From positions 62,001-126,000 of IMG/VR virus record IMGVR_UViG_3300036715_003906: a stretch of 64,000 nt of DNA. The stretch is one strand, 5' to 3'. Position numbers and translations under genes: made by a program. The notes under the pieces were generated by a model that saw nothing but the letters and a program-made list of their open reading frames with translations, was not told where the DNA came from and did no database searches. Of this stretch, positions 49,459-64,000 are shown in pieces; the first letter of the stretch is position 1, and each line of letters opens with the position of its first letter.

Positions 49459-52400
49459 TCAGTTACGGGTCCGGTCGTAGGTATACCCCGACAGCGGCGC
49501 GGGGCTCGGGGCGGCCGGGACGGAGACGGGCACGCGGGCCGGAGTGAAGCGCGCACTCCGTAGCCGGGCGGTCTTGTCCATGTAGTCGTCGAGGCCCGCC
49601 CCGACCTCGTCCCAGTCGAGGGGCTCCTCCAGGACCTCCTCGGCGTTCTCGACCACCTCGGCGTCCGTGGCGGGCACGGCGCCGGGGGTGAGGGTCTCCG
49701 GCTGCTGGACGTTCTGCCCGGGCTTGAGACCGGCCTCCGCGACGAAGGGCGACATGCCCCCGGGGCAGAGGATCGTAAGGGACTTCTGGGCCCGGGTGAG
49801 CGCCACGTACCCGAGCCGGCGCTCGGACTCCATGGCCGTCTGGGGGTCGACGAGCTGCTCCTCGCGGATCTCGTTCTCCTTGGGCTTGCGGGGCGCACGC
49901 TCCATCGGGAACTTGCCCTTGGGCATCATGAGGGTGACGTCGGGCCACTCGGCGCCCTTCGTCGAGTGCGCCGTCCCCAGGTAGACGCCCGGCGGGGGCT
50001 TGCGCTCGGAGAGCGGGACACCCTGGGCCACCTGCTGCTTCTCCCACTCGTCCGGATCGATCCGCAGCTCCTCCGACCGGCTGGCGAGCCCGTCGAACTT
50101 CGCCCGGAACTGGTGGGGGTCCTGGGGGTTGTAGTTCGGGTCGACCTCCTGGGGCTGCATCATCATCATGACGAACTCCAGAGACCCGAGGCTCGACTTC
50201 TCCTCCGTCAGCTCCGGGTCCTCCTCGGCCGCCTCCTGGCTCACCCGCGCTGACAGCCGGCGCACGGTGGCGTCATGGAAGGACTCGATGCGGGTCGCCC
50301 AGACGGTCTGGCCCGGGTCGGGCGGGATCACCTCGACGATGGGCAGGGCGAGGATGCTCTCGAACAAGTCCTTCGAGGAGAACTCCTTGTCCTGCATGTA
50401 GGAGCGGATATCCCCCAGGCCCTCGAGGAGCGGCTTGGCCTTCTGCGCATCCTTGGACGCCCGGTACACGGGGTCCCCCGTGATCCCCTGGATCATGGTC
50501 GAGAGGAACATCGGGTCCCGGACGCACGCCAGCAGGGGGTCGAAGGTGGCGAAGTCGAAGCGGTGACGGGCGCAGTAGTCCTGCATCGCCCGCTTCATGG
50601 CCTTCTCGGCCAGCTTGACGTTCTCCGCCCGGTCCGTCTGCGAGAACTTGGGCTTGATAATCCCGCCGTGGATGAGGGTCTGGCAGAAGGACTCCTGCAC
50701 CGCCCGGGGCGTCGAGCCCGTCGCCACGTTCATGAAGGACCGGAAGGTGTCCGTCTCCTGCGAGCCGAAGACCGAAGCGGCCTTCTTCTGGACGTACCGG
50801 GTCCCGGTGACCGCGCAGATGCGCTGGAACACCCCCAGCTCCGCGTTCGTCCGGGCGAGGACGGCGAAGTTGCTGAGGGGCTCCCCGGCCGCCGTGGCCA
50901 TCATGATCTTCTTGCCGAACTCCACCGCCGCGTCTGCGTCCGTATTCGGGACCAGGACGTTCAGGTTCGCCTCCCCCTTCACCCGGTGCGGGGCCGCCTT
51001 GGCCACCATGGGGATCTGGTTCGCGTTGTTGGCGATGAGCTTGTTTGCCGCGTCGACAAACTCCGGGGCGCAGCGGTAGTTCGTCGTGATCTGCCGGTCC
51101 TTGAACCCCATCTGATCGAGCGCGATGAAGTTGGCCGGGTCTGCACCACGGAACTGGTAGATCGACTGCTTGTCGTCGCCCACCATCCAGAAGGACTTGT
51201 CCTTGTCGTCCGTCTGGATGTGCTCCGTCATGAGCTGGAGGATCTCGAACTGAAGGGGGTTCAGGTCCTGGCACTCGTCGACCATGATGTGGTCGATGCC
51301 CGCCTGGACCTTCTTCCGGGCCTGGGGGTTCGCCTTGATAATGTCACGGAAGACCGCGAGCATGTCGTTGAAGTCCCCGACGCGCGGCTTGCCGCCCCGG
51401 TAGAAGTCCACGAACTTCGCGAACTTCGGCGTGCCCTTGGGGTTCGTCGAAGGGCCGCAGAGGTTCGGCCGCCACGACGTCCCGAGGCCGCCCTTGAGCC
51501 CCTCGTAGACCTCGTAGAAGCGGAGCGCCTGGTACGCCTCCATCGAGCCCTGCTTCTCGCACCAGTCCTTGACCTGGTCCATGGACATGCCCTGCCCCTG
51601 GAAGATGTTGAGGTAGGCCATCATCCGGGCCGACTTGGGGGGCATCTTCCACAGCTCGTCCGCCGGCACCTCGCGCTTCTCGCCCTCGGGGTCGCCCGGG
51701 GGGTCGCGATCGATGTACGGGAAGCACTCCTCCCAGATGTCCTTGGTCGCCTTGAAGAGGGCCGACGCCGACACCATCCCGCCCCGGCCGTTGACCCGGG
51801 CGAAGATGTTGACCTGGGCCGGTGTGCCGTAGGCATTGATGGCCGCCAGGAAGGTCGAGTGCATCGTCCCGACCGTGACCCCGTTCGCGTTCTTGTTCTT
51901 GGTCGTCGAGACCTTCCCCGACCCGACCTTGACCGCCATCTTCTGCGCCAGCTCTTCCGCCGCCTTCGTGTTGAAGGACATGGCGATCATCCGGTTCGGC
52001 GTGGCGCCGCTGTCGATCAGGTACTGGACCCGGGCGAGCAGGGTCGTGGACTTGCCCGACCCGGCGCCGGCCGACACCCGCACCTTGCCCCCCGTGAGGG
52101 CCGCCGACCGCTGCTCGGGATCGAGCTTGCGAAGGGCCGGGGGAACGTTGGCCTCGATGGCCGGATCCGTCGCCACGGCCACCGCCACGCTCGTGGCCAC
52201 CGCAATGGCCTCCGCACGGGTGATGGGTCCGTCAGGCGTCCCCGCCTTGTCCATGGCCCGCGTGGCCGCCTCGTGGGCCTCCGCCTCGACCTTGGCCAAG
52301 GTTGCCGACTGCTTGTCCCCCGCCTCCGCCCCCTCGTCACGGTCAGGCTTCGCCTCCCGCGTCACCTGCTGCGCAAACGACGCCTTGGTGGCATCCGCCA

Positions 52401-52995
52401 CCCCCTTGACCGCCTCCTGGATCGGATTGATCTGGACAGGTCCGGGGACCGCGACCTCGCTCGCCTTGTCGATCCACTTCTCGACGACCTTGTTCCGCAG
52501 CACGATGGCCGACAGACGCCCGAGGGCGGCATCCGGGTCATCCATCTTGGCCGCGTCCATGGCGTCGAGGGCCTCCTTGCGGGCCTTGTTGCTCGACCCA
52601 AAGACCGCCTTGGCCGTCGTCGACCCGCCCCGGGACAGGACCGACCGGAGCTTGAGCGCCCGGAGGGATGCCCCATCGGGGCTCGGGGGCGGCCGGAGAG
52701 CGGCCTCCAGGAGCTTGACGCTGGCCGGGGTCGTGAGACTCGACCGGATCGTCTGAGCGATGGCCTCCAGGCTCCCTCGCTCCACACGCCGGAGCAGGCT
52801 CAGGCCCTGCGACAGCGTGGGGTCCATGGGATCAACTACGCCTCGGGTCTCCTGCTGCCAGCGCATGAACGTGTCCACGCTCAGGAGAAGGACCAGGTAA
52901 TCGGCGACAGCCAACTCCCGGATGTCGGCGTCGTCCGTGTGGTCCGTCGCGACGGTGACGGGCAGGGGGCGTTCGTAGCGGAGTTCCATCGTCAT
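49459..52995 (-). CDS. uvrD: UvrD/Rep/PcrA superfamily-1 helicase with about 290-aa N-terminal extension, 1178 aa
   Basis: AGAGSGKS (I), TMHS (Ib), VDECQD (II), VGDDKQSIYQFRGA (III), TNYRC (IV), ARTN (IVa), TAHSTKGAEW (V), ERRLGYVALTRA (VI). Confidence 0.95.
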   Translation of the reverse strand: MTMELRYERPLPVTVATDHTDDADIRELAVADYLVLLLSVDTFMRWQQETRGVVDPMDPTLSQGLSLLRRVERGSLEAIAQTIRSSLTTPASVKLLEAALRPPPSPDGASLRALKLRSVLSRGGSTTAKAVFGSSNKARKEALDAMDAAKMDDPDAALGRLSAIVLRNKVVEKWIDKASEVAVPGPVQINPIQEAVKGVADATKASFAQQVTREAKPDRDEGAEAGDKQSATLAKVEAEAHEAATRAMDKAGTPDGPITRAEAIAVATSVAVAVATDPAIEANVPPALRKLDPEQRSAALTGGKVRVSAGAGSGKSTTLLARVQYLIDSGATPNRMIAMSFNTKAAEELAQKMAVKVGSGKVSTTKNKNANGVTVGTMHSTFLAAINAYGTPAQVNIFARVNGRGGMVSASALFKATKDIWEECFPYIDRDPPGDPEGEKREVPADELWKMPPKSARMMAYLNIFQGQGMSMDQVKDWCEKQGSMEAYQALRFYEVYEGLKGGLGTSWRPNLCGPSTNPKGTPKFAKFVDFYRGGKPRVGDFNDMLAVFRDIIKANPQARKKVQAGIDHIMVDECQDLNPLQFEILQLMTEHIQTDDKDKSFWMVGDDKQSIYQFRGADPANFIALDQMGFKDRQITTNYRCAPEFVDAANKLIANNANQIPMVAKAAPHRVKGEANLNVLVPNTDADAAVEFGKKIMMATAAGEPLSNFAVLARTNAELGVFQRICAVTGTRYVQKKAASVFGSQETDTFRSFMNVATGSTPRAVQESFCQTLIHGGIIKPKFSQTDRAENVKLAEKAMKRAMQDYCARHRFDFATFDPLLACVRDPMFLSTMIQGITGDPVYRASKDAQKAKPLLEGLGDIRSYMQDKEFSSKDLFESILALPIVEVIPPDPGQTVWATRIESFHDATVRRLSARVSQEAAEEDPELTEEKSSLGSLEFVMMMMQPQEVDPNYNPQDPHQFRAKFDGLASRSEELRIDPDEWEKQQVAQGVPLSERKPPPGVYLGTAHSTKGAEWPDVTLMMPKGKFPMERAPRKPKENEIREEQLVDPQTAMESERRLGYVALTRAQKSLTILCPGGMSPFVAEAGLKPGQNVQQPETLTPGAVPATDAEVVENAEEVLEEPLDWDEVGAGLDDYMDKTARLRSARFTPARVPVSVPAAPSPAPLSGYTYDRTRN

Positions 52996-53778: not shown

Positions 53779-55026
53779 CTACCCCCCCACGCCTTCGTCG
53801 AGGAGACGCTGGCACAGGAAATCAGGGTCCGTATAGGGTTCATCCTCCCGGACGACCAGGTAATGGAACCGGCCGTCCTCCCGTACCTGTCGCTCCTTCT
53901 CCCGGTCCCGCACCTGGAGAGCATCGAAGAGACCCCGGTCCTTGATATACACGGAGGGGAACTCCCAGTGCTGGAACCCGTGGAACTCGGCGATGAGGCG
54001 ATGCGAGGGGAAGAAACCGTCGAACCGGTAGAAGGCGTTTTTTGCGGACATGAATGCCCGCGACCGCCACTCCATCTCGTAGGTCGCGCCCCCAAGAACC
54101 TTCGCGACAGCTTCCAGGAAAAGGGTCTGGCTAATGAACCGGTGAAAGGTCGGGAGGCCGTGGCGCTGGCATTCACGCTTGACCACGGCGAAGTCGTGCC
54201 CGAGACCCGCCATCGCCCGACCGATCGCGATCTTGCCGTTGCCAAGTGCGAAGGGCAACAGCGCATCCTTGTCCAGACGGATCGTGGCGCGCTCTGCCCT
54301 CTCCCGCACGTAGCGATGGCTGAGGCGGAGACCCAGGCGGCCCATGTACTTTGTCACGGTCTCCTCCGTGACGCTCAGCTCCTCAGCCATGGCCTTCCGG
54401 TCAACCGCCCCGGTCGCGTCCAGGTACGGCGTGAAGTCGACGTCGGAGAGGTCCAGCGCACGGCCTGACGGGACGCCCATCTTCAGGGCGGAGAGCTTCT
54501 CCGACGTGGAAAGGAGGCCCGGATGGTCCTGCTTTGTGAGCCCCCTCGACCACGACGCTCGCCCCCTCATGGCCTCCGCTGCGTGAGCTACCCGCTCGTC
54601 CGTCTCTTTGGTGAGCCCGCGGTTCCAGCCCGCCGCCGCGGACATCTTCGCCCGGGTCTCGGGGGACAAGGGGCGGCCCTTCAAGGGCGAAGGAGCCCGT
54701 GGACGGACTGCCCGCTGGACACGAGCCTCCTGCCTCTCCCGGTCCTTACACGCCGGGCACCGGGCCTGAAGGGACGCGGTCAGCCCCACCTCATGAACGG
54801 CACCACAAGGGCAGGTGGCGGCCTTCTTCTTACCCGCCCTCGGGCTCTCCGCGTGCTGCTTGACGAAAGCCGCCTTGCGGTTGGCCTCGCACGCCTCCGA
54901 CCGAATACGGGCCCCCGGGTACTGCCCCCGATACGACTCGGCCGAGACCCCGTGCGCCGCCTTGAGGTGGCGGGCCAGTGTCTCGGCCGAGTGCCCACAG
55001 ACCAAACAAGTCACCCTCGTTTCCAT
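53779..55026 (-). CDS. Putative homing endonuclease: Zn finger, NUMOD3-like repeats and a DUF559/Vsr-like PD-(D/E)xK nuclease, 415 aa
   Basis: CLVC...H...H; KGRPLSPETRAKMS; WNRGLTKE/WSRGLTKQ; RFDGFF...IAEFHG.QHW...D..K. Lower GC with an AT-rich leader. Confidence 0.75.
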   Translation of the reverse strand: METRVTCLVCGHSAETLARHLKAAHGVSAESYRGQYPGARIRSEACEANRKAAFVKQHAESPRAGKKKAATCPCGAVHEVGLTASLQARCPACKDRERQEARVQRAVRPRAPSPLKGRPLSPETRAKMSAAAGWNRGLTKETDERVAHAAEAMRGRASWSRGLTKQDHPGLLSTSEKLSALKMGVPSGRALDLSDVDFTPYLDATGAVDRKAMAEELSVTEETVTKYMGRLGLRLSHRYVRERAERATIRLDKDALLPFALGNGKIAIGRAMAGLGHDFAVVKRECQRHGLPTFHRFISQTLFLEAVAKVLGGATYEMEWRSRAFMSAKNAFYRFDGFFPSHRLIAEFHGFQHWEFPSVYIKDRGLFDALQVRDREKERQVREDGRFHYLVVREDEPYTDPDFLCQRLLDEGVGG

Positions 55027-55050: not shown

Positions 55051-58000
55051 TTAGAAACAAGGGGTTGATTTTGTCTTATGCTGTGCTAAGAGTCGGGCGC
55101 GCAGGTTGAAGGTCAGGATAAGGTACAGCAGGGGGAAGACCGGCTGGTAGTACGCCTCGAACCGCAGCACCGTGGGGTCATCGGGGTCGATGGCCGAGCT
55201 GACCCCGCTGAAGGCCGCGATGATCTCCGCCTGGATGAGCTGCCGGAGGAGGCCGGTCATCGAGACGTTGACCTCGTTCGTCCGGCTCGCCAGGAACTTG
55301 GTCCCGACGAAGGAGTCGAGGAGGAGCCGCGACTGCTGCTGCACGAAGTCCGCGATCTGCGTGACCGTGGGCGTCCGGGTCAGGATGTTGTCCATCCGGG
55401 TCGTGAGGCCGTGGCGGATACGGATGATCGGGTCGAGGTCCTCCAGCACCGTGACGCCCGCGACCGCCGTCTGGTTGGCCTCGACGGCGTCCAGGATGCG
55501 GGGGATGCGGGTGATGCCGAGGAGCTTCCGCCGATCGTAGGGTGTCGCCACGTCGACCGCGGGGCTCACGACCGCCCCCGAGAGGGCCGCCGCGAACACC
55601 GTGCCGTCCGTGAGCTGCTCGAAGTTCTGCCCCAGCTCATCCGTGAGGGTGATCACGGACGAATCGGGGTAGAGGGCGATGATCCGGTTGCTCGCCATGG
55701 CCCGCGCCACCGTCTGGGCGTTCTGGGGGCTCGTCCCGGAGGCGAAGCCAATGAAGCCGAGGCGCTCGCTCTGGTGGAGCGTGTCGCTCATCACCTCGAC
55801 GTGCCGGGTCAGGTACGAGTAGATCGCCGTGGTCGTCCCGAGGGGCACGAGGACGTCCGGCCGGATGTTCCCGGGCAGGGGGGTCCCCAGCTCATCGATC
55901 GCCGTGATGAAGTCCCGGTCCGACGCCTGGCTCGTGCCGGGAACCTTGAGCACCTGCTTGACCCCGACGAGCAGGGAGCCGTTGGTGATCGCCAGGTAGG
56001 CCGCGAGGCTCACCCGGTTCTCCGCCGACACCCGGCCGTAGTTGGCCTCGATGGTCTTGAGCTGCCGGAAGATCCGGGTGTCGAAGCCCTGCTTCATGTA
56101 GTTGTAGCTGACGTAGTACACGTCACCCACAGCCGGCTCGACACCCCCGGGGTTGAAGGTCTGGAGGGTCGAGGTGTCGTTCACCGCCACCCCCACCGTG
56201 TTGCTCACCGTCAGCTCCAGGCCGGGGACCGCGTAGCCGGGGCGGGCGGGGTCAACCTGGAAGGTGGGGCTCACCGTGAGGGTGAAGCTCCCGGCGTTGG
56301 CGTAGGACCCGACCTGCGAGGGCAGGACCGAGAAGCGGAGGCCCGTGGCGGGGTCCGTGTAGGTCTGCCCCGGGACGCCCGTCCCCGCGGAGCCCGCGGG
56401 GTGGGTCGAGGTGACCGTGTAGATCTGCTGGGCATCCTCGCCGACATCCCCGTCCGTCGCCGGGGTGACGCCCACGCCCGTCGAGATGTTGAAGGCGCTG
56501 TTCGAGGAGGTGGCAAACCCCACGCTGCTCGTCGACAGGCCCGTCGTCAGGGACTCGATCGTGAGGTAGGTCTGCCCGTTGATCGTGGCGGCGTAGGCGA
56601 CGCCCGCCGCGGTGAAGCCCGCCGTCGTCATGAGGACGTCGACCACCTCGCCCGGGGTGACCATCGTCTGACCCGCCGCGTCGCCCTGCGTGAAGCCGAG
56701 GACGTCGTTGGCGTTGCCGTCGAGGATGGTCAGGGACGAGCCGGGGTCGTTCGTCGGGCTCGTGAGCCGCAGGTGGTTCAGGTTACCGAGGGTCCCGACC
56801 GAGGCGACGCCCGAGAGCCCGGCGATGGCGTTGATCGCCACGGCGACCGCCGAGGTGGCGACCGCCGCTCCCGCGGGCAGCGTCATCTGGTAGTCGGTCC
56901 CGTTCATGCGGAACTTGAACGTGTCGTTCAGGCCCGCCGTGATGGCGAAGGTGCCCGCCAGGCTCCCGAGGAGGGTCGAGGGCTTGTTGACGGCCCCCGG
57001 CGTCCCCACGGCCGACTGGAAGGGCGCGAAGCCCAGCGTGGCCTCGGCCGTGCCCGGGTTGACCTTGGCCGTGGAGACGACGTCAAAACCGCCGGGGAGC
57101 GCGCCGGGCGTCGTCGTGCTGGTGACGATGAAGAAGAGGTCGCCCGTCGAGCCGCCGATCTGGACGAAGCTCGCCACCGAAGACCCGACCTCGACGTTGA
57201 TGTCCGAGACGATCTGGGTCGGCGTCCGGTTGCCCGCCGTCAGCGTCACGGGGATGACCGTGTCGTCCACGACCAGGTTGAGGACGTCGTTGACCGTGGC
57301 CGTGATCGTGATCTTGCCCGCGTCGGGCCCGGTCTGGATCGGGGTCACATGACCGCCGACCAGGACCGCGGGGGACGCCGTCGCGAGGTTGCTCGTGATC
57401 GTCGACCCGTTCAGCCGCGTGGCCCAGGTGGCCGAGTAGGGGGTGTAGAAGCTGTACGGCCCCGCGCCCTTGATCGTGTAGGCCGCGTTCTTGGCGACGG
57501 CCTGCCCGAAGGTGACCGTCACCGTCTCGCTCACCGGCGTCCCGGTGCCCGCGTGGAAAGCGTCGGGGATCTGCTCGACCCCCCGGGGCCACTGGACAAT
57601 CTGGGGCAGGGCCGACTTGGTCCCGAAGCGCACCTGGTAGAGCGGCGCATCGAGGGTCGTCGAGAAGACCTCGTACTGCCCGACGCCAACCGGACCCGCC
57701 ACCTTGTTGGTCAGCAGGTAGGTGTCATCGACGATCCGGTTGTAGTAGAAGGTCGCGAAGGCCGTCCAGTCCGGGGGGACCGCCGCCGCGAGGGTGAGGA
57801 GACGGCTCGCGCCGTCCACCTTGAGCACCTTGACGGGGGGACGGTTCAGGGCGTCCCGCAGGTTCCGACCCACCCGCACGACCACGAGGTCGGGGCGGTT
57901 CGTGATGACGTCCTGCTTGACGTTGGTGACCGAGGAGTAGAGGGACACCCCGAGCTGCGTGTCCCGGCCGTTCCCCGTGGTGGGGATCTCGGGCATCACG

Positions 58001-59334
58001 AACTGGGTCGCCGAGACCGTCGCCGGAATCGTCGTGCTGTCGATGAGGCGGCTGCACTGGGCGAGGTACATCTTCTCGTCCACGAGCTGGCCGGTCACCT
58101 GCGAGGAGCCGAAGGGCTCGGCCCCCGGGGTCGTCGTGGCCGGGGCCACGAGCCAGCTCGTCCCCCAGTGAATGACCGAGACGTCAGGCGAGGGGTTCAG
58201 GATGACGAAGTCCTGCCCCTGGATGTAGTCGGCCCGCGAGGGGGCGATGCCGCACCGGTCGACCGAGGTGACCAGGGTGTTCGGCAGGTAGTCGAAGGTG
58301 TCCTGCCAGGTGTTCGCCCAGTAGGTCACCGTGACCGTGCTGCCCATGGCCGGGGCGTAGGGGAGGGTGACCGCCCCGTTGGCCCCGTCCACCGCCGACG
58401 GGATGACCTGGGACCCGTTGACCTTGACGACCACCTTGCTCGTGTCGGTCGTCGTGAGGCCCGAGCCCGTGCCGTCCACGATGGGCCGGTTGAAGACCGT
58501 GAAGGTCGCGTTCCGGTTCGTGACCGTGAAGCTCGTGAAGCCGAGGGGGCCGTTGGCCGTCCCGTCCTGGACCTCCAGACTCTGGGTCGCCGTGAACATG
58601 ACGTGGTTCTCCCCATGCCCGTCCATGTACACGGACGTCGAGAAGTTGGGGAGCAGGAGGGCGTCGAACTGCGCCTTGACCCCCGAGGCCGTGAGGTTGC
58701 CCGCCGTCAGCGTCAAGGTCCGGGCCACCCCGTTGACCTTGAACTTGAAGATGTCGTTCGACCCGGCGACGATCACGAAGGGCTCGAAGCCCGGCGTCGT
58801 CAGGGTGGCGACCGCCCCCGTCACCTGCGAGGAGACGTCATCCGTGAAGCTCGTGTCGCCCCGGTGGAAGTAGTACGTCGCCCGCACCAGGTCCGTCGGC
58901 TGCGTCGGAATCTGGAGCGTGATGAGCCCCTTCTGCCCCGACACCCCGCCGAGAGCCACCGGCACCCCGTTGACCGTGACGCTCACCGACCGGATATCGT
59001 TCGTCACGCGGCCGAACCCCTGCCCATCGACGATGGGGTTGTTCTTCACGCGGAACGTCACGTAGGTCCCGTTCTGGGCCCCGAGGATCAGCTTGGCCGG
59101 GTTGGCGGCGTCCACCACCCACGAAACAGAAACGTCCTCGTTGACGATCTGCTGGTCGACCGTCGAGGACGAACCCCGGACGATCTCCACGTTGAACTGC
59201 GACAGCTCTTGCTGACCGACCCCGATCTCGACCGGGATACGAAGGCCCGCCACGAGGTTCGAGGCGTTGGCGTCCGTGAGGGTCCGGGAGTAAACGCCGG
59301 GGGGAACGTAGGTGACAAAGGGTCCGACGGACAT
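55051..59334 (-). CDS. Contractile tail sheath protein with many inserted domains, 1427 aa
   Basis: N-terminal YVPPGVY. C-terminal sheath core 'IRIRHGLTT...TVTQIADFVQQQ...FVG.K...YYQPVFPLLYLILTFNL'. Confidence 0.9.
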   Translation of the reverse strand: MSVGPFVTYVPPGVYSRTLTDANASNLVAGLRIPVEIGVGQQELSQFNVEIVRGSSSTVDQQIVNEDVSVSWVVDAANPAKLILGAQNGTYVTFRVKNNPIVDGQGFGRVTNDIRSVSVTVNGVPVALGGVSGQKGLITLQIPTQPTDLVRATYYFHRGDTSFTDDVSSQVTGAVATLTTPGFEPFVIVAGSNDIFKFKVNGVARTLTLTAGNLTASGVKAQFDALLLPNFSTSVYMDGHGENHVMFTATQSLEVQDGTANGPLGFTSFTVTNRNATFTVFNRPIVDGTGSGLTTTDTSKVVVKVNGSQVIPSAVDGANGAVTLPYAPAMGSTVTVTYWANTWQDTFDYLPNTLVTSVDRCGIAPSRADYIQGQDFVILNPSPDVSVIHWGTSWLVAPATTTPGAEPFGSSQVTGQLVDEKMYLAQCSRLIDSTTIPATVSATQFVMPEIPTTGNGRDTQLGVSLYSSVTNVKQDVITNRPDLVVVRVGRNLRDALNRPPVKVLKVDGASRLLTLAAAVPPDWTAFATFYYNRIVDDTYLLTNKVAGPVGVGQYEVFSTTLDAPLYQVRFGTKSALPQIVQWPRGVEQIPDAFHAGTGTPVSETVTVTFGQAVAKNAAYTIKGAGPYSFYTPYSATWATRLNGSTITSNLATASPAVLVGGHVTPIQTGPDAGKITITATVNDVLNLVVDDTVIPVTLTAGNRTPTQIVSDINVEVGSSVASFVQIGGSTGDLFFIVTSTTTPGALPGGFDVVSTAKVNPGTAEATLGFAPFQSAVGTPGAVNKPSTLLGSLAGTFAITAGLNDTFKFRMNGTDYQMTLPAGAAVATSAVAVAINAIAGLSGVASVGTLGNLNHLRLTSPTNDPGSSLTILDGNANDVLGFTQGDAAGQTMVTPGEVVDVLMTTAGFTAAGVAYAATINGQTYLTIESLTTGLSTSSVGFATSSNSAFNISTGVGVTPATDGDVGEDAQQIYTVTSTHPAGSAGTGVPGQTYTDPATGLRFSVLPSQVGSYANAGSFTLTVSPTFQVDPARPGYAVPGLELTVSNTVGVAVNDTSTLQTFNPGGVEPAVGDVYYVSYNYMKQGFDTRIFRQLKTIEANYGRVSAENRVSLAAYLAITNGSLLVGVKQVLKVPGTSQASDRDFITAIDELGTPLPGNIRPDVLVPLGTTTAIYSYLTRHVEVMSDTLHQSERLGFIGFASGTSPQNAQTVARAMASNRIIALYPDSSVITLTDELGQNFEQLTDGTVFAAALSGAVVSPAVDVATPYDRRKLLGITRIPRILDAVEANQTAVAGVTVLEDLDPIIRIRHGLTTRMDNILTRTPTVTQIADFVQQQSRLLLDSFVGTKFLASRTNEVNVSMTGLLRQLIQAEIIAAFSGVSSAIDPDDPTVLRFEAYYQPVFPLLYLILTFNLRARLLAQHKTKSTPCF

Positions 59335-59434
59335 GGAGTCTCCTGGTGAGAGCCTTTAGGGATGCGGGTGTGAGTGCGGGGCTCCCCGAAGGGGTCGGAT
59401 CTTGGTCTGGATGTGGGGACGGAAGAGGGGACGG

Positions 59435-59460
59435 GTCCGCCGCTTCACCCTGCGGCGGAC
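59435..59460 (-). other. 9-bp hairpin in the sheath 5' leader
   Basis: GTCCGCCGC-8nt-GCGGCGGAC, directly after a CTTCTATG motif (59461-59468). Confidence 0.6.
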
Positions 59461-59470
59461 CATAGAAGCC

Positions 59471-59935
59471 TTACCGGGCCTTCTGCTTCGCCCGGGCCCT
59501 GGCTTCCTCCCGGTGCGTGAGAAGGCTCGCCACGGCCTTGTGGGCCGTCTCCCGACGAGCCACGGCCCCTGTCGGCGTGAGGGTCTCGTACTCCGTCCAC
59601 CCGGGGCCATCGACCCTCCGGAGCTTGGGCGTCCCGCCCCCCGCCCGGGCCGCCTCCTTCACCTTGGCGCGGTCCCCGTAGTAGACCCAGCGACGGTCTG
59701 CATCCCGGCCCACCGCGTGGTCCGCCGTGGGGTAGTCGTCCTTGTGGACCCCGCTGTTACCCTCCTTCGCCTTGGGCGTCTCGAAGGCGAAGGCAAAGCC
59801 CTGGTCCTTGAAGAGCCGGGGGGCCTGCTCATGGCAGAGGGAGCAGGCATGGGACAGGTTCGGGCCCATCTTGAGGATGAGGTCGAACGTGAGCCCGCAG
59901 TCGGGGTTCTGGCACTCGAAAACGTACTTGGGCAT
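59471..59935 (-). CDS. FmdB-family zinc-ribbon protein, 154 aa
   Basis: MPKYVFECQNPDCG..F...CSLC...APRL. Confidence 0.8.
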   Translation of the reverse strand: MPKYVFECQNPDCGLTFDLILKMGPNLSHACSLCHEQAPRLFKDQGFAFAFETPKAKEGNSGVHKDDYPTADHAVGRDADRRWVYYGDRAKVKEAARAGGGTPKLRRVDGPGWTEYETLTPTGAVARRETAHKAVASLLTHREEARARAKQKAR

Positions 59936-59949
59936 GGGGTCTCCGATCT

Positions 59950-61110
59950 CTATTTGATGCGTTCGTAGCTGTGATTGCGGTTTGGCAAGACAGGGGCCGT
60001 CGCCGACGTGAGACCGAGGTGCAAGGCCCCCTCGACCCCCTGCGTACCGTCCTGGCGTTCCCCTGTCACCTTGCTGAACGTGAGGGGGAGCGGAATGTGG
60101 ACCTCCCAGTCCGCCCGGAACTGGATGCCCAGGCTGGCCGTGTAGAAGAAGAGGTCCCCCGTCTCGTCGTAGGACTCCTCCGCCGTCCCCCCGATGCTGA
60201 TGTCGAGTAGCTCGATGCCCTCGAACTCCAGGACCGGCTTCTTCTCGGCCGTGAGGGTCATGACCGCGAAGTCCGCGATCTCCTCCATCTGGATTGGATC
60301 CGTCGCGATCACGTCCACGTCGAAGGAAAGCTCGTACTTTCCCCCGTAGGCCATCGCTGCCTGGACCCTGTCCTGGTAGACGGACACGGCGACCTTGTCC
60401 CCCTTCCGGGCCCGCTTGCCGAAGGCCAGGACGACGCCGGGCAAGGTCAGGGCGTCGGACGTGTTCCAGTAGAACTCCTGGGGCCCGATGCTGTCCCCGG
60501 GGTAGCGGTAGTCGGCCGTGACCGTCGTCCCCCCAGGAAAGGCCGCCTGAAAGGTGATGGCCCCCTTGCCGTCCACCACGTAGTCCCGCCCCGGCTGCAT
60601 GAGCACCCGCTGGTTCAACCAGAGGCGTAGCGTCTTCGGGGCCGGCGCGTGACGGAGCTGGGCCGCCCGCTCCACCCCGGAGACGAAGCGCAAAACCGGC
60701 TCGTCCGTCACGGTGTAGAGGGGGTCGATGATATAGGTCCCCGGCGTCTGGGGCGTGTCAGGCGCCTCCAGGACCTCCAGGAAATAGACGCCCGGGGCCG
60801 TGGGCATGACGTCCCCCTTCTGCTGGACGACCGCCAGATCCTCCCGGACCCATTCGAGGGGGTACGACGGGGGGCCCACGTAGGACAGCATCGTCCGGGA
60901 GTGGATGGTCCCGACGAAGTTGTCCGCGGAGAGGACCACCTTGTTCGCGCTCGCCCCCTTGACCACAATGCCGAAGTGCGGCCTCTCCTCGAAGCTGTAC
61001 TTGTCCTGGATGAAGGGGACGATCTTCGCGTAAATCGGATGACGGCTGAAGCTGTCCTGAAGCTCGACGATCAGCCGCCGCTTCATCGACGAGAGCAGGT
61101 AGTAGTACAC
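59950..61110 (-). CDS. Putative tail completion/terminator (neck) protein, 386 aa
   Basis: Upstream of the sheath. C-terminal alpha/beta region 'SFDVDVIATDPIQMEEIAD...FYTASLGIQFRADW'. Confidence 0.5.
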   Translation of the reverse strand: MYYYLLSSMKRRLIVELQDSFSRHPIYAKIVPFIQDKYSFEERPHFGIVVKGASANKVVLSADNFVGTIHSRTMLSYVGPPSYPLEWVREDLAVVQQKGDVMPTAPGVYFLEVLEAPDTPQTPGTYIIDPLYTVTDEPVLRFVSGVERAAQLRHAPAPKTLRLWLNQRVLMQPGRDYVVDGKGAITFQAAFPGGTTVTADYRYPGDSIGPQEFYWNTSDALTLPGVVLAFGKRARKGDKVAVSVYQDRVQAAMAYGGKYELSFDVDVIATDPIQMEEIADFAVMTLTAEKKPVLEFEGIELLDISIGGTAEESYDETGDLFFYTASLGIQFRADWEVHIPLPLTFSKVTGERQDGTQGVEGALHLGLTSATAPVLPNRNHSYERIK

Positions 61111-61118
61111 GCCCCCCC

Positions 61119-61144
61119 GGGCGGCACAGGTAGTTTAGCCGCCC
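61119..61144 (-). other. 7-bp hairpin between the actin-like and tail-completion genes
   Basis: GGGCGGC-12nt-GCCGCCC, intergenic. Confidence 0.4.
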
Positions 61145-61154
61145 CCGGCCGCCC

Positions 61155-62162
61155 TCACTCCTCTTCGGAGGCGAGAACCAGGAGCCCCTCGGCGACCGCC
61201 GTCATCGGGTCCGAGGCGGGCACGATGTCGCTGACCTCGATGGGAAAGCCCTTCTTCTTGACCGCCTGGAACTCCTGCTTGAACACGTCGAGGAAGTTCT
61301 TGGCTCGCGTCGTGCCCCCCGAGACGACGAGCGGCACGGCCTCGGGCAAGTCGACCGCCGCCGTCCCCTTGCGCACGAAGTCCGCCGTCTGCTGGAGCGT
61401 GTAATGGACGAGCGACCGGATGTAGACGACCAGCGCCTCCTCCTCGCGCCCCTTGGGGTGGAGCAGGTCGACCCCCCGCTCCTTGATCGCGCAGACCTTG
61501 GCCGAGGTCGACCCGAGGGCCCGGGCCGTCTGGCTGTCGATCCAGTCCCCGCCCCGGGAGAGGCTGAACGCAAAGGCCGGCACCGTCTGGTAGGCCAGGG
61601 CGATGTTGGCCATCCCCGAGCCGTAGCTGATCGCCAGACCCGAGAAGGTCGAGCCCGCGCACTGGCTGTAGATGACCGCCTCCGCCTCGTTCTTCGGGTG
61701 CGCCGTGTACCCGAAGCCGCTCAGGATCTGGCGGAGGCTCTCCGTGTGGAAGATGACGTCCTGCCCCTCCTGATCCACCGGAGCCGCCGGGACGGAGTAG
61801 TAGCAGTGCTCCCCCTCGACCACGGGCTCCCCGATGACGTTGTGCAGGAGGTACGAGAGGATCTTCTGCGCGTCGAGTTCCCCCGCCGACACCACGCCCC
61901 GGGCGAGCGGCCTACGCAGGTCCCGCTTGAAGAGGTTGGCAAGCGTGAGGGCGCTGTCCCCGAGGACCAGGAGCTTGTCCCCCTCAACGATGTAGTCGAC
62001 CTTGCCCATCTTGAGCTGCTTCTTGGCCGACTCGTCGAGGTCGATGAAGCAGTCACGGATGCGCCGGATCGAGGTCTTGCCCCCCTCGGCCATCCGGGCC
62101 GAGACGAGGTTCATGGTTCCGATATCGAGGCCCACGCCGGGCCGGTTGAGGTCCTTGCTCAT
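61155..62162 (-). CDS. Actin-fold (MreB/FtsA/ParM-like) ATPase, 335 aa
   Basis: Phosphate-1 GLDIGTMNL, connect-1 NEAEAVIY, phosphate-2 variant ISYGSGMAN, adenosine VVSGGT, connect-2 DPMTAVAEG. Confidence 0.85.
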   Translation of the reverse strand: MSKDLNRPGVGLDIGTMNLVSARMAEGGKTSIRRIRDCFIDLDESAKKQLKMGKVDYIVEGDKLLVLGDSALTLANLFKRDLRRPLARGVVSAGELDAQKILSYLLHNVIGEPVVEGEHCYYSVPAAPVDQEGQDVIFHTESLRQILSGFGYTAHPKNEAEAVIYSQCAGSTFSGLAISYGSGMANIALAYQTVPAFAFSLSRGGDWIDSQTARALGSTSAKVCAIKERGVDLLHPKGREEEALVVYIRSLVHYTLQQTADFVRKGTAAVDLPEAVPLVVSGGTTRAKNFLDVFKQEFQAVKKKGFPIEVSDIVPASDPMTAVAEGLLVLASEEE

Positions 62163-62171
62163 ACCGGCCCC

Positions 62172-62849
62172 CTACACCGATCCGGGCTCCATCCTTTGCC
62201 GGAGCAGGTACGCCAGCTCCTCGTGCTTGTCCGCGATGCCTTGCAGCAGGTTGTCCAGGCCGGGCGTGAGCAGCCCCTTTTGCCGGAGCTGCCCGTACAC
62301 GAGGTCGAGCAAGACAAGGAAGCGCAGGAGAGCCCGGAAGCTCACCGCCACCGGGTCCGGAGCCGCCTCTTGCTTGTGGGGGCCGAGGTAGGATTCGAGG
62401 AAGACCCCCCGGGCATGGTGCTGCGGGAGTACCCCCACCAGCGCCGCCGACCCGAGGCCCACCGTCCGCTCTGCCAGGGCATCGACGAGGGCGTAGGTGT
62501 CGTCGTAGAGGCGCTGGAATAGCTCATGGTCGGCATAGAAGGCCGGCCCCTTGCTCTGCCAGTGGCTCCCCAGGTGAACGTCCACCTCGGCCCGTAGGGC
62601 CGCGAGGACCACGGCCAGCTCCGCCATCGGCACCCCGCCGAAGTCGGCGAGCAAGTGCGTGAGGATGATCTCCGCCTCGACCCCGGGCTGGGCCGCCATC
62701 CGGTGGACAAAGGACCACAGCCGGTGGCGATGAGGCGCCGTGGAGGCGCTCTTCGTCCGGGCGATGCGGGGTGCGGGCTTCCCGGGGAGGTAAGGAGGAC
62801 CGTCACGCAGTGCGTCGTACCCCAACTGATCCGTCCAGAGGTCAGGCAC
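62172..62849 (-). CDS. dps: Dps-like ferritin-fold protein with basic N-terminal extension, 225 aa
   Basis: HW...H...D...E with exact Dps spacing H-x11-H-x14-D-x3-E (SHWQSKGPAFYADHELFQRLYDDTYALVDALAER). C-terminal 'KHEELAYLL'. Confidence 0.8.
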   Translation of the reverse strand: MPDLWTDQLGYDALRDGPPYLPGKPAPRIARTKSASTAPHRHRLWSFVHRMAAQPGVEAEIILTHLLADFGGVPMAELAVVLAALRAEVDVHLGSHWQSKGPAFYADHELFQRLYDDTYALVDALAERTVGLGSAALVGVLPQHHARGVFLESYLGPHKQEAAPDPVAVSFRALLRFLVLLDLVYGQLRQKGLLTPGLDNLLQGIADKHEELAYLLRQRMEPGSV

Positions 62850-62852
62850 GAG

Positions 62853-63386
62853 TCACCCCCCCGTGCGAGCGGAGAGCTGGTCGGCGACGGCCCGGGCCTC
62901 GTCCGCGAGGGCCTCGATGGACCGGATGACCGGCCGGGCGTAGTCCACCGCCCCGATCCCGTGCGACTGGGCCAGGGCCTCCGCCGACGCTCGCCGCACC
63001 CGCTCGACGTCCGCCACACGAGCCGTGATGACCCCGAGGGCCGGGTGGTTCGGGGTGCGGAGGAAGTCGCCCGCCACCGCCTCTGGATCGAGACCCAGAT
63101 CGGCGGCCTTCTTCGCCTTGCCCTTGCCCTTGTCGGCCTTCTCGGCCTTGGCGTCCTCCTTCAGCTCCTTGCCCACGTCCCCCATGCTGACCTTCTCGGG
63201 CTTGGCCGAGAAGGTCTTGCCCGTGTACGGGGAGCGGACGCTCACCATCTTCTTCGGGAGGTAGAAGTCCTGCTTCGTTTCCGGGCAGGTATAGAGCCAG
63301 AGGGACGTGGCCGCGGTCTTGTCGTCGGCGGTCTTCTCGACAAGGAACTGGGCGAGATCAGCGAGGTGGGCTTGGCGGGGGTGCAT
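62853..63386 (-). CDS. Hypothetical protein, 177 aa
   Basis: GGAGGAG RBS; internal CPET..F / SPYTG..F pseudo-repeat; Lys/Ala-rich linker. Confidence 0.7.
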   Translation of the reverse strand: MHPRQAHLADLAQFLVEKTADDKTAATSLWLYTCPETKQDFYLPKKMVSVRSPYTGKTFSAKPEKVSMGDVGKELKEDAKAEKADKGKGKAKKAADLGLDPEAVAGDFLRTPNHPALGVITARVADVERVRRASAEALAQSHGIGAVDYARPVIRSIEALADEARAVADQLSARTGG

Positions 63387-63419
63387 GTCGTCTCCTCCAC
63401 ACCGGTGGGGAAAAGGACT

Positions 63420-64000
63420 TTACCGCCCCTGCTTGATTCGCCGCAGGGCCTCCCGGGCACTCTCCGTCCCCCCCTGCTGGGTCGACTCCGTGACCGTCAC
63501 CCGCCCGCCCTCGGGCTTCTCGAACGTGGGGAGAAAGATCGGGACGTCCGACGAGGACGACGAGCCACCCTGAACGTGGACGTGGGACGGGGCCGCCGGA
63601 ACGCCCACCGTGACGACCGCCGGCCGGGACTGGAGTTCCGTGAGGAGCGTGAGCATCTGGTCAAAGCGGGGGTCGGGGGCGGGGCCCTTGGACGCGACCA
63701 GGCCCTGGAGAATACGGATCTCCGCGTCCCGCTCACCCACCTGGGCCTGGGTCCGTGCCAGGTGCTCCCTCAGTCCCTCGACCTGGGCCTGGAGGTCAGC
63801 CTTCTCCCGCTCCAGCACCGCGAGCCGGTCCTGCACGTCCGTGTCCACGGGGGGCCCGCCCCCCTCCAGGGGCAGTCCCCGCCTCACCCGCGCAAGGAGA
63901 CTCTGGTTGACCGCCCGCCACAGGTCGCGGGAGGAGAGAGCCTTGTCCGTCGCTATCGCCACCACCTCACCCTCCGTGATGATCAGCGAAAGATCCGCGA
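63420..64000 (-). CDS. Coiled-coil protein, partial (frame open past the window end)
   Basis: The in-frame sequence stays open to 63998 (ADLSLIITEGEVV...). Heptad segment LAVLEREKADLQAQVEGLREHL. Confidence 0.7.
   Translation of the reverse strand, partial: ADLSLIITEGEVVAIATDKALSSRDLWRAVNQSLLARVRRGLPLEGGGPPVDTDVQDRLAVLEREKADLQAQVEGLREHLARTQAQVGERDAEIRILQGLVASKGPAPDPRFDQMLTLLTELQSRPAVVTVGVPAAPSHVHVQGGSSSSSDVPIFLPTFEKPEGGRVTVTESTQQGGTESAREALRRIKQGR

What the first reader, a model, noticed from the sequence alone, without database searches (positions are those of the whole stretch)
61155..62162. Phage actin-fold ATPase embedded in the virion morphogenesis operon
All five actin-superfamily motifs are recognisable, but phosphate-2 lacks the usual Asp (ISYGSG instead of DxGxG). 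Known phage cytoskeletal proteins (PhuZ tubulin of phiKZ-like phages, AlpC actin of CGP3) act in DNA positioning. This gene instead lies between putative head-associated genes and the neck/sheath genes. Together with the upstream coiled-coil (63420+), the 177-aa protein and Dps, it is the best candidate here for an undescribed system: an actin-like filament or chaperone organising virion assembly, head-tail joining or capsid trafficking.
Basis: partly seen in the sequence, partly recalled or inferred. Interest (0 to 1): 0.72.

Follow-up and report, generated by a model that had tools for sequence, protein, structure and literature searches.

The report
Volactin-type actin gene in huge phages
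This gene encodes a bacterial-virus version of the recently described 'volactin' actin family; it is a conserved single-copy gene that always sits among the head-to-tail joining genes of a large group of uncultivated huge phages. It probably forms a virus-made cytoskeleton, but nobody has tested what that does.

Summary
The ORF at 61155-62162 (-) is real. It encodes a 335-aa actin-fold protein that matches Pfam Volactin (PF25216) over its full length (E 2.7e-66) and folds confidently (pLDDT 93.8) into an MreB/MamK-like structure.

The "missing Asp" in phosphate-2 (ISYGSG) is not peculiar to this gene. Ser-x-Gly-x-Gly is conserved across the volactin family.

The window is part of a 251-kb fragment of an uncultivated huge phage. 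More than 80 viral contigs (up to 529 kb; other metagenome contigs up to 620 kb) carry orthologues at 40-66% identity. Only one of about 185,000 prokaryote species genomes does, on a contig with the same phage genes.

Gene order is collinear throughout:
- head-tail connector
- neck/"minor tail" protein
- (Dps-like)
- actin
- tail terminator
- Zn-ribbon
- tail sheath

Phages G and Tunturi_5 share this module without the actin.

So the observation and its structural-module context are confirmed, and host capture is rejected. The proposed partner set is only partly conserved, and a role in virion assembly remains untested.

Best reading: an ATP-driven, filament-forming phage actin, expressed with late genes, that organises infection. 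This is a new phage member of a known family.

The parts
61155..62162 (-). Phage volactin-family actin homologue, 335 aa
   Evidence: ORF. Pfam PF25216 E 2.7e-66, full length. AF2 model pLDDT 93.8, pTM 0.91. Foldseek hits MreB/Mbl, MamK, BeeR and actin at probability 1.0. TM 0.92-0.95 to ESM Atlas volactin clusters.
62109..62132 (-). Phosphate-1 motif GLDIGTMN (D13, G15, T16 invariant)
61674..61697 (-). Connect-1 region PKNEAEAV with invariant E159 (presumed catalytic Glu, as in MreB/ParM)
   Evidence: The catalytic role is inferred from the family.
61605..61634 (-). Phosphate-2 loop AISYGSGMAN. S179 replaces the usual Asp; G181 and G183 are invariant.
   Evidence: Relatives carry inteins inserted after residues 179, 181, 184/185 and 203.
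61302..61328 (-). Adenosine motif VVSGGTTRA (G282, G283 invariant)
61179..61211 (-). Connect-2 helix DPMTAVAEGLL (G326 invariant), followed by a short acidic C-terminal tail (SEEE, 61158-61178)
59950..61110 (-). Tail-terminator / neck protein, 386 aa, immediately downstream (44-nt gap)
   Evidence: Atlas look-alikes SP10_terminator, Gp37 and T4-gp15. tblastn to Tunturi_5 gp324 'tail terminator' E 3e-8. AF2 model pLDDT 76.8. Best PDB match is phage 812 neck chain G, E 7e-9, with further neck/terminator/gateway proteins below it. Present in 82/84 loci.
59471..59935 (-). Zn-ribbon protein, 154 aa
   Evidence: Pfam Zn_ribbon_8 E 1.7e-5, below the cut-off. Present in 74/84 loci. The same family sits at this position in relatives.
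55051..59334 (-). Giant tail sheath protein, 1427 aa
   Evidence: tblastn hits 244 phage records, those listed under features annotated tail sheath: Tunturi_5 gp326 4e-50, phage G gp178 2e-27, and many actinophages. Present in 82/84 loci at median 61% identity.
62172..62849 (-). Dps/ferritin-like four-helix-bundle protein, immediately upstream (9-nt gap). The true start is probably the Met at residue 51 (about 62699).
   Evidence: phrog_3636 'DNA binding protein' 8.9e-9. Atlas structure and feature matches to phage Dps/ferritin clusters. Present in 69/84 loci.
62853..63386 (-). 177-aa Lys/Ala/Glu-rich protein of unknown function
   Evidence: Weak FYDLN_acid hit. Present in 42/84 loci.
63420..64000 (-). 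C-terminal part of a 410-aa coiled-coil-like protein that runs off the window. It is poorly conserved.
   Evidence: Present in 7/84 loci. No Pfam or PHROG family.

Best explanation
The gene encodes a phage-lineage member of the volactin family of prokaryotic actins.

Shown here:
- It has the complete actin/MreB/MamK fold and every nucleotide-binding motif. A Ser at the phosphate-2 Asp position is the family norm.
- It is a single-copy, strongly conserved gene of a large clade of uncultivated huge phages with genomes of about 0.4-0.6 Mb. The five near-complete members checked show no recognisable tubulin.
- It was inserted, with a Dps-like gene, into an older neck/tail module (head-tail connector, p488, tail terminator, sheath). 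It has stayed there, on the same strand and nearly abutting the terminator gene.

Inferred:
- It binds and hydrolyses ATP and polymerises into dynamic filaments, as H. volcanii volactin does in vivo.
- It is made together with the late structural genes.
- The filaments organise the infected cell by positioning or moving large cargo (phage DNA, capsids or tails). This would be an actin-based counterpart of the PhuZ tubulin spindle or the AlpC filaments.

Which cargo is moved is not resolved.
For: - Family and fold.
- Invariant D13/G15/T16, E159, G181/G183 and G282/G283 across members at 31-80% identity.
- Inteins have repeatedly invaded the phosphate-2 loop in relatives, as expected for a highly conserved, functionally constrained site.
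- Distribution: over 900 homologues, contigs to 620 kb; 80 IMG/VR loci; a monophyletic syntenic clade.
- The actin is as conserved as the sheath: median 60% versus 61% identity.
- Five near-complete 407-529 kb genomes have one volactin each and no PF00091 tubulin.
- Volactin forms dynamically unstable, ParM-like filaments in vivo (PMC10869688).
- Bacterial volactins are fused to HU or ParB-HTH DNA-binding domains, which suggests cargo-attached filaments.
- Operon-like packing: a 9-nt gap upstream with a G-rich RBS-like run before the ATG, a 44-nt gap downstream, same strand in 79/79 loci, median gap 14 nt.
Against: - There is no direct evidence of polymerisation, ATPase activity, expression timing or cargo.
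- The self-association prediction gave no verdict.
- No transcript data were listed.
- The Ser-for-Asp change in phosphate-2 could alter or slow hydrolysis.
- Phages with the same neck/tail module (phage G, Tunturi_5) manage without this gene.
- Absence of tubulin was tested with one Pfam model in five genomes only.
Confidence: 0.55

Rival explanations
1. Virion-morphogenesis factor in the narrow sense. The actin-fold ATPase acts specifically at the neck, as a filament, scaffold or chaperone that brings filled heads and very large tails together or assists terminator/sheath assembly. It might itself be virion-associated, as the closterovirus Hsp70 homologue is.
For: - It lies invariably between neck genes and directly before the tail terminator across deep divergence, down to 40% identity.
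- The neighbours are confirmed as neck/tail proteins.
- The sheath is unusually large at 1427 aa.
- Structural look-alikes among viral proteins include virion-assembly Hsp70 homologues.
Against: - Position is the only evidence.
- More distant phage volactins lie among small non-structural genes.
- LR756511 carries a volactin, but no sheath related to this one was detected anywhere in that record.
- The best structural matches are filament formers (MreB, MamK), not chaperones.
- There is no substrate-binding domain.
- Related phages assemble the same module without it.
Confidence: 0.2
2. DNA-positioning or partition system of the ParMRC/AlpAC type. The filaments push or anchor phage genomes or replication centres, or segregate an extrachromosomal prophage. 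The adjacent Dps-like or 177-aa protein would serve as the DNA-binding adaptor.
For: - Known phage and plasmid actins (AlpC, ParM, Alp7A) work this way (PMC4446434, seen; the rest is established knowledge).
- Bacterial volactins are fused to HU and ParB-HTH domains.
- The upstream neighbour matches a PHROG annotated 'DNA binding protein' and Dps.
- One relative is classed as a provirus by IMG/VR.
Against: - No centromere-like repeat array lies near the gene.
- The Dps-like gene is missing from 15/84 loci and from the whole second syntenic clade.
- The gene sits in a late structural operon rather than with replication or early genes.
Confidence: 0.15
3. Host-cell remodelling. The phage actin replaces or perturbs the host's shape-determining cytoskeleton, for example to enlarge or stabilise the cell for production of very large virions. 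This would echo volactin's role in archaeal cell shape.
For: - The founding family member affects cell shape.
- The fold is closest to MreB/Mbl and MamK.
Against: - No amphipathic N-terminal helix or other evident membrane-binding element is visible in the sequence (inspection).
- No RodZ/MreCD-type partners are nearby.
- The idea is purely analogical.
Confidence: 0.07
4. Functionally irrelevant passenger ('moron') that happens to be lodged in the structural module.
For: Phage structural modules tolerate insertions. Phages G and Tunturi_5 lack it.
Against: - It is single-copy and present in every near-complete genome examined.
- It is as conserved as the sheath.
- The catalytic residues are invariant.
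- Its position has been retained across a very broad clade.
Confidence: 0.03

Closest known systems
Volactin (VolA, HVO_2015) of Haloferax volcanii; Pfam PF25216
   Same: Same Pfam family, with a full-length match well above the cut-off. Same fold: TM 0.92 to an archaeal volactin cluster. Same motif set, including Ser at phosphate-2.
   Different: Encoded by a huge phage rather than an archaeon. It forms a separate phage clade and lies in a neck/tail operon. Volactin's known role, the rod-to-disk shape transition, has no obvious equivalent here. Filament formation has not been shown for the phage protein.
MamK and MreB/Mbl (bacterial actins)
   Same: Nearest solved structures. MamK is best by profile, E 5e-15. 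By fold, MamK 5ljv scores TM 0.71-0.73 and MreB 0.61-0.68.
   Different: Only 14-19% identity. There is no Pfam MreB_Mbl hit. Phosphate-2 has Ser instead of Asp. No magnetosome or cell-wall partners are present.
AlpC/AlpA of prophage CGP3, and ParM-type partition actins
   Same: Phage- or plasmid-encoded actin-like ATPases. This is the likely mode of action: dynamic filaments acting on large cargo.
   Different: A different actin family. No adjacent centromere repeats and no proven adaptor. The gene is located with late structural genes, not with replication genes.
PhuZ tubulin spindle of nucleus-forming jumbo phages
   Same: A phage-encoded cytoskeletal polymer conserved within a jumbo or huge phage lineage. 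It is a possible functional analogue. The five near-complete relatives checked have volactin but no tubulin-family hit.
   Different: Tubulin fold versus actin fold, so there is no homology. No evidence for a phage nucleus was sought or found here.
Closterovirus Hsp70 homologue (Hsp70h)
   Same: A viral actin-fold ATPase linked to virion tail assembly (established knowledge). It appears among structural matches in BFVD.
   Different: Hsp70h has a C-terminal substrate domain and belongs to Hsp70. This protein is the size of the nucleotide-binding domain alone and groups with filament-forming actins.

Membership tests
Volactin family (Pfam PF25216) | Full-length match to the family HMM above the curated cut-off | tested here: met
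   224.7 bits against a cut-off of 35, E 2.7e-66, profile positions 3-321 of 321. Confirmed in genome context.
Volactin family (Pfam PF25216) | Actin/ASKHA fold closest to other volactins | tested here: met
   AF2 model pLDDT 93.8. TM 0.95 and 0.92 to Atlas volactin clusters, against 0.72-0.78 for salactin, MamK and MreB clusters.
Volactin family (Pfam PF25216) | Conserved nucleotide-binding motifs, including family-typical S-x-G-x-G at phosphate-2 | tested here: met
   D13, G15, T16, E159, G181, G183, G282 and G283 are invariant and S179 is conserved in at least 90% of 39 diverse members. S179 aligns with the MamK Asp.
Volactin family (Pfam PF25216) | Dynamic filament formation in vivo | not testable with these tools
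   Shown only for H. volcanii VolA (PMC10869688). The self-association prediction gave no verdict.
Host MreB/FtsA (recent capture) | Best family match is MreB_Mbl or FtsA, and close cellular homologues exist | tested here: not met
   Volactin is the only Pfam family reported. One close relative was found among 185,579 species genomes, on a contig carrying the same phage module. A 300-genome sample of that genome's phylum gave only cross-hits of 38.7 bits or less (the sample includes unpublished genomes G126, G007, G094 and G054, all with weak hits only).
ParMRC / AlpAC-type partition cassette | Actin-like ATPase plus adjacent DNA-binding adaptor | tested here: inconclusive
   The actin is present. 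The upstream Dps-like protein matches a PHROG annotated as DNA-binding but is absent from 15/84 loci. No binding test was possible.
ParMRC / AlpAC-type partition cassette | Centromere-like iterated repeats next to the cassette | tested here: not met
   Only two-copy repeats of about chance level, inside coding sequence, in 59300-64000.
Hsp70 / Hsp70h chaperones | Nucleotide-binding domain followed by a substrate-binding domain; Hsp70 family match | tested here: not met
   The protein is 335 aa, the size of the nucleotide-binding domain alone. There is no HSP70 Pfam hit. The top PDB fold matches are MreB, MamK, BeeR and actin.
Core gene of a huge-phage clade, resident in the neck/tail module | Conserved presence and collinear synteny in viral contigs | tested here: met
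   The actin was recovered in all 84 loci, which were fetched through their actin gene. Terminator in 82/84, sheath in 82/84, p488 in 70/84. Order is collinear in all. Same strand in 79/79. One copy in each of 5 near-complete genomes.

The most novel reading that the evidence does not exclude
Huge phages of this clade build a late-expressed, actin-based cytoskeleton dedicated to virion morphogenesis, for example trafficking or aligning filled capsids and very large tails for head-tail joining. That would make it the first actin counterpart of the PhuZ spindle and the first cytoskeletal element genetically wired into a phage neck/tail operon.
Probability: 0.2. Interest if true: 0.85.

Novelty: new member of a known kind. 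Interest (0 to 1): 0.6.

Why it matters
Phage-encoded cytoskeletons are known from very few systems: PhuZ/TubZ tubulins and the AlpC actin. Those systems have reshaped ideas about how large phages organise infected cells.

Here a different actin family, first described in 2024 in an archaeon, turns out to be a conserved single-copy gene of a widespread clade of 0.4-0.6 Mb phages with no recognisable tubulin in the five near-complete genomes checked. It is fixed inside the neck/tail operon.

This gives a concrete, testable candidate for how non-nucleus-forming huge phages handle very large genomes and virions. It also shows that much of volactin-family diversity may be viral, with inteins and DNA-binding fusions among the relatives. 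No paper in the searched library describes this.

Tried and rejected
- Complex prediction with three copies of residues 6-335: score 0.00, no verdict. It counts neither for nor against polymerisation.
- Single-sequence phmmer against PDB sequences: no hit. Only the profile search worked.
- Profiles of the 386-aa protein and of the sheath against PDB sequences: no hits. Their identities came from tblastn to annotated phages and from fold search instead.
- PHROGs: no family for the actin.
- Megablast of the region against GenBank phages: no match.
- The diverse alignment A1 was too divergent for locus scans. The closer alignment A2 was used.
- Promoter scan: no sigma-70-like sites, so it was uninformative for a phage of unknown host.
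- RNA sequencing runs: none was listed. Read laying was therefore not used and expression timing remains inferred.
- Host-capture hypothesis: rejected.
- Centromere-like repeats: none found.
- The tree is midpoint-rooted and has no taxon-labelled archaeal sequences. It shows that the syntenic phage clade is monophyletic but does not give the direction of transfer.

Full report
**Observation**

The ORF at 61155-62162 on the minus strand starts with ATG and encodes 335 aa. Its codon-position GC (0.65/0.42/0.95) is that of genuine genes in this roughly 68% GC sequence. Pfam gives one family, Volactin PF25216, over the whole length (E 2.7e-66, 224.7 bits, cut-off 35). PHROGs has no family for it.

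An AlphaFold2 model built on a 39-sequence alignment is confident (pLDDT 93.8, pTM 0.91). Foldseek places it in the actin fold, with MreB/Mbl, MamK, BeeR and eukaryotic actin all at probability 1.0 and 14-19% identity. A sequence profile of the family finds MamK first among solved structures (E 5e-15), then BeeR, MreB and FtsA.

**The "missing Asp"**

I aligned 39 family members at 31-80% identity to the query. D13, G15, T16, E159, G181, G183, G282, G283 and G326 are invariant, and S179 is conserved in at least 90%. In the profile alignment to MamK, the family's "S-f-G-a-G" lines up with MamK "D-I-G-A-G". Ser at the phosphate-2 Asp position is therefore a volactin-family trait, not a peculiarity of this gene.

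The loop is clearly under strong constraint. Canonical inteins (Cys...His-Asn followed by Cys/Ser) have been inserted in relatives after the residues equivalent to 179, 181, 184/185 and 203. Seventeen of the 150 representative clusters listed carry such insertions.

**What the window is**

The window is positions 62001-126000 of a 251,474-bp IMG/VR virus record that CheckV estimates as 53% complete. That makes it a fragment of a huge phage of roughly 0.45-0.5 Mb. Near-identical DNA occurs in microbial-mat, sediment and lake metagenomes. The host is unknown.

**Distribution**

- More than 900 homologues were found, over 100 of them at 60-65% identity, on contigs up to 620 kb.
- About 986 clusters at the 50% identity level match at E ≤ 1e-3.
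- An IMG/VR scan returned 80 loci on viral contigs up to 529 kb.
- GenBank's uncultured huge phage LR745208 (485 kb) has a 50.6% identical copy. LR756511 (595 kb) has a 28% identical one.
- A scan of one genome per 185,579 prokaryote species found a single close relative, in a MAG labelled Lysinibacter. That contig carries the entire phage gene block.
- In a 300-genome sample of that MAG's phylum, nothing beyond MreB-like cross-hits of 38.7 bits or less was found. That sample includes four unpublished genomes, G126, G007, G094 and G054, all with weak hits only.
- Five near-complete relatives (407-529 kb, three with terminal repeats) each have exactly one volactin gene and no Pfam tubulin match.

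A recent capture of a host MreB/FtsA is therefore rejected.

**Neighbourhood**

I ran tblastn with the window's proteins against 84 related loci. These loci were fetched through their actin gene, so its presence in all 84 is by construction.

| Protein | Loci with a hit (of 84) | Median identity |
|---|---|---|
| Actin | 84 | 60% |
| 386-aa protein | 82 | 56% |
| 1427-aa protein | 82 | 61% |
| Zn-ribbon protein | 74 | – |
| 488-aa upstream protein (p488) | 70 | 56% |
| Dps-like protein | 69 | – |
| 177-aa protein | 42 | – |
| Coiled-coil protein | 7 | – |

(All.) The order is collinear in every locus. Actin and the 386-aa gene are on the same strand in 79/79 cases, with a median gap of 14 nt. 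In the window the gaps are 9 nt upstream and 44 nt downstream of the actin gene, and a G-rich RBS-like run precedes the ATG.

The neighbours were identified as follows.

- **1427-aa protein: tail sheath.** Its C-terminal part matches 244 phage records; in those listed the match lies under features annotated as tail sheath (Tunturi_5 gp326 4e-50, Bacillus phage G gp178 2e-27).
- **386-aa protein: neck/tail-terminator protein.** Atlas look-alikes are SP10_terminator, Gp37 and T4 gp15. It matches the Tunturi_5 "tail terminator" at 3e-8. Its AF2 model (pLDDT 76.8) best matches a neck chain of phage 812 (E 7e-9) and other neck, terminator and gateway proteins.
- **p488** is homologous to Tunturi_5 gp322 "minor tail protein" (5e-33) and to phage G gp175.
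- **A roughly 300-aa gene further upstream** in relatives is homologous to the Tunturi_5 gp319 head-tail connector (2e-38).
- **The 225-aa upstream neighbour** is a phage Dps/ferritin-like protein.

Tunturi_5 and phage G have the same connector, p488, terminator, sheath order but no actin. The actin, with the Dps-like gene, is therefore an insertion into an older neck/tail module that became fixed in this clade.

The module is not purely structural. The sheath is followed by a MucR/NUMOD3 protein and a UvrD-type helicase.

**Wider family**

- A tree of 200 domain sequences shows the syntenic phage clade as monophyletic. A second syntenic clade (L074-L083) lies nearby and L084 lies further away.
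- P0128 (45% identity) keeps the order actin, large protein, Zn-ribbon.
- P0191 (36% identity) lies among small phage-like ORFs without tail genes.
- A separate clade has N-terminal extensions. Atlas and Pfam show HU-volactin and ParB-HTH-volactin fusions, a volactin fused to a BY-kinase-like protein, and tandem volactins in bacteria. Archaeal volactins form their own structural cluster.

**Mechanism**

Family, fold, intact nucleotide site, phage-specific clade, single copy, strong conservation and fixed position in the neck/tail operon are shown.

The following is inferred from the family. H. volcanii volactin forms dynamically unstable, ParM-like filaments (PMC10869688). From this I infer that the phage protein polymerises in an ATP-dependent way, and from its packing that it is expressed with the late genes. 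The most likely role is a phage cytoskeleton that positions or moves large cargo late in infection (confidence about 0.55).

The cargo is unresolved. The DNA-binding fusions in bacterial relatives and the Dps-like neighbour favour DNA (about 0.15). However, no centromere-like repeats are present and the Dps-like gene is dispensable in some lineages. Host-shape remodelling and a neutral passenger are less likely.

**Comparison and novelty**

The protein meets every testable membership criterion for the volactin family and fails those for MreB/FtsA, Hsp70 and a ParMRC-type cassette. It would work like AlpC/ParM or PhuZ without belonging to those families.

The literature searches found volactin papers only on haloarchaea. 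They found no description of phage volactins or of an actin gene in a phage neck/tail operon. The library is incomplete, and databases (Pfam pre-annotation, ESM Atlas cluster names) already label viral members. I therefore rate it a new, phage member of a known kind, with a moderately high interest score because it makes a phage actin cytoskeleton directly testable.

**What led nowhere**

The self-association prediction gave no verdict. No RNA runs were listed. The promoter scan was empty. Several sequence searches against PDB were blank.

Noticed in passing
L005:4102-6664 (equivalent to window coordinates 67102-69664, just beyond the window's end): The head-tail connector gene is one ORF of about 300 aa in relatives and is homologous to Tunturi_5 gp319. 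Here it is split into 165-aa and 207-aa pieces, with a 438-aa ORF between them. Two of these ORFs carry intein C-terminal splicing domains. This looks like an intein-invaded structural gene.
   Followed up: partly
Relatives P0062, P0121, P0124, P0125, P0127, P0129, P0144, P0181, P0184, P0196, P0209, P0230, P0256 and others: Volactin genes of related phages carry inteins, some with LAGLIDADG endonucleases. They sit at four or more distinct sites in or beside the phosphate-2 ATP-binding loop, after query residues 179, 181, 184/185 and 203.
   Followed up: yes
Proteins P0149, P0158, P0159, P0122; ESM Atlas clusters: Bacterial volactin-family proteins occur fused to HU or ParB-HTH DNA-binding domains and to a Wzz/GNVR/ParA-like (BY-kinase-type) module, and also as tandem duplications. 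This hints at DNA- or envelope-linked roles not yet described for the family.
   Followed up: partly
window 53779-55026 (-): A 415-aa protein with a ROS/MucR zinc finger and a NUMOD3 motif lies between the sheath and a UvrD-like helicase. It is present in only 20/84 related loci, so it is probably a mobile homing-endonuclease-like insertion.
   Followed up: no
window 49459-52995 (-): A 1178-aa UvrD/Rep-type helicase lies directly downstream of the tail sheath block and is also found there in relatives. A replication or repair gene is thus embedded in the structural region.
   Followed up: no
window 55051-59334 (-): The tail sheath is very large at 1427 aa. Only its last 375 residues or so align to ordinary sheaths of phage G and actinophages. 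The remaining 1000 residues or so are clade-specific insertions.
   Followed up: no
L086 / G006 contig C4 (MAG labelled Lysinibacter sp., 127-kb contig): This is the only prokaryote species genome with a close volactin relative, and it carries the whole phage neck/tail block. It is likely a mis-binned phage contig, or possibly a hint to an actinobacterial host.
   Followed up: partly
Bacillus phage G gp506 (BFVD entry G3MAP7): Phage G lacks a volactin in its neck module. It nevertheless encodes a distant actin-fold protein elsewhere in its genome (Foldseek E 1.5e-11, 10% identity).
   Followed up: no
window 62172-62849 (-): The Dps-like ORF called from the first GTG is probably 50 codons too long. 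The database copy starts at the Met at residue 51, and only residues 51-225 are modelled as the four-helix bundle.
   Followed up: no
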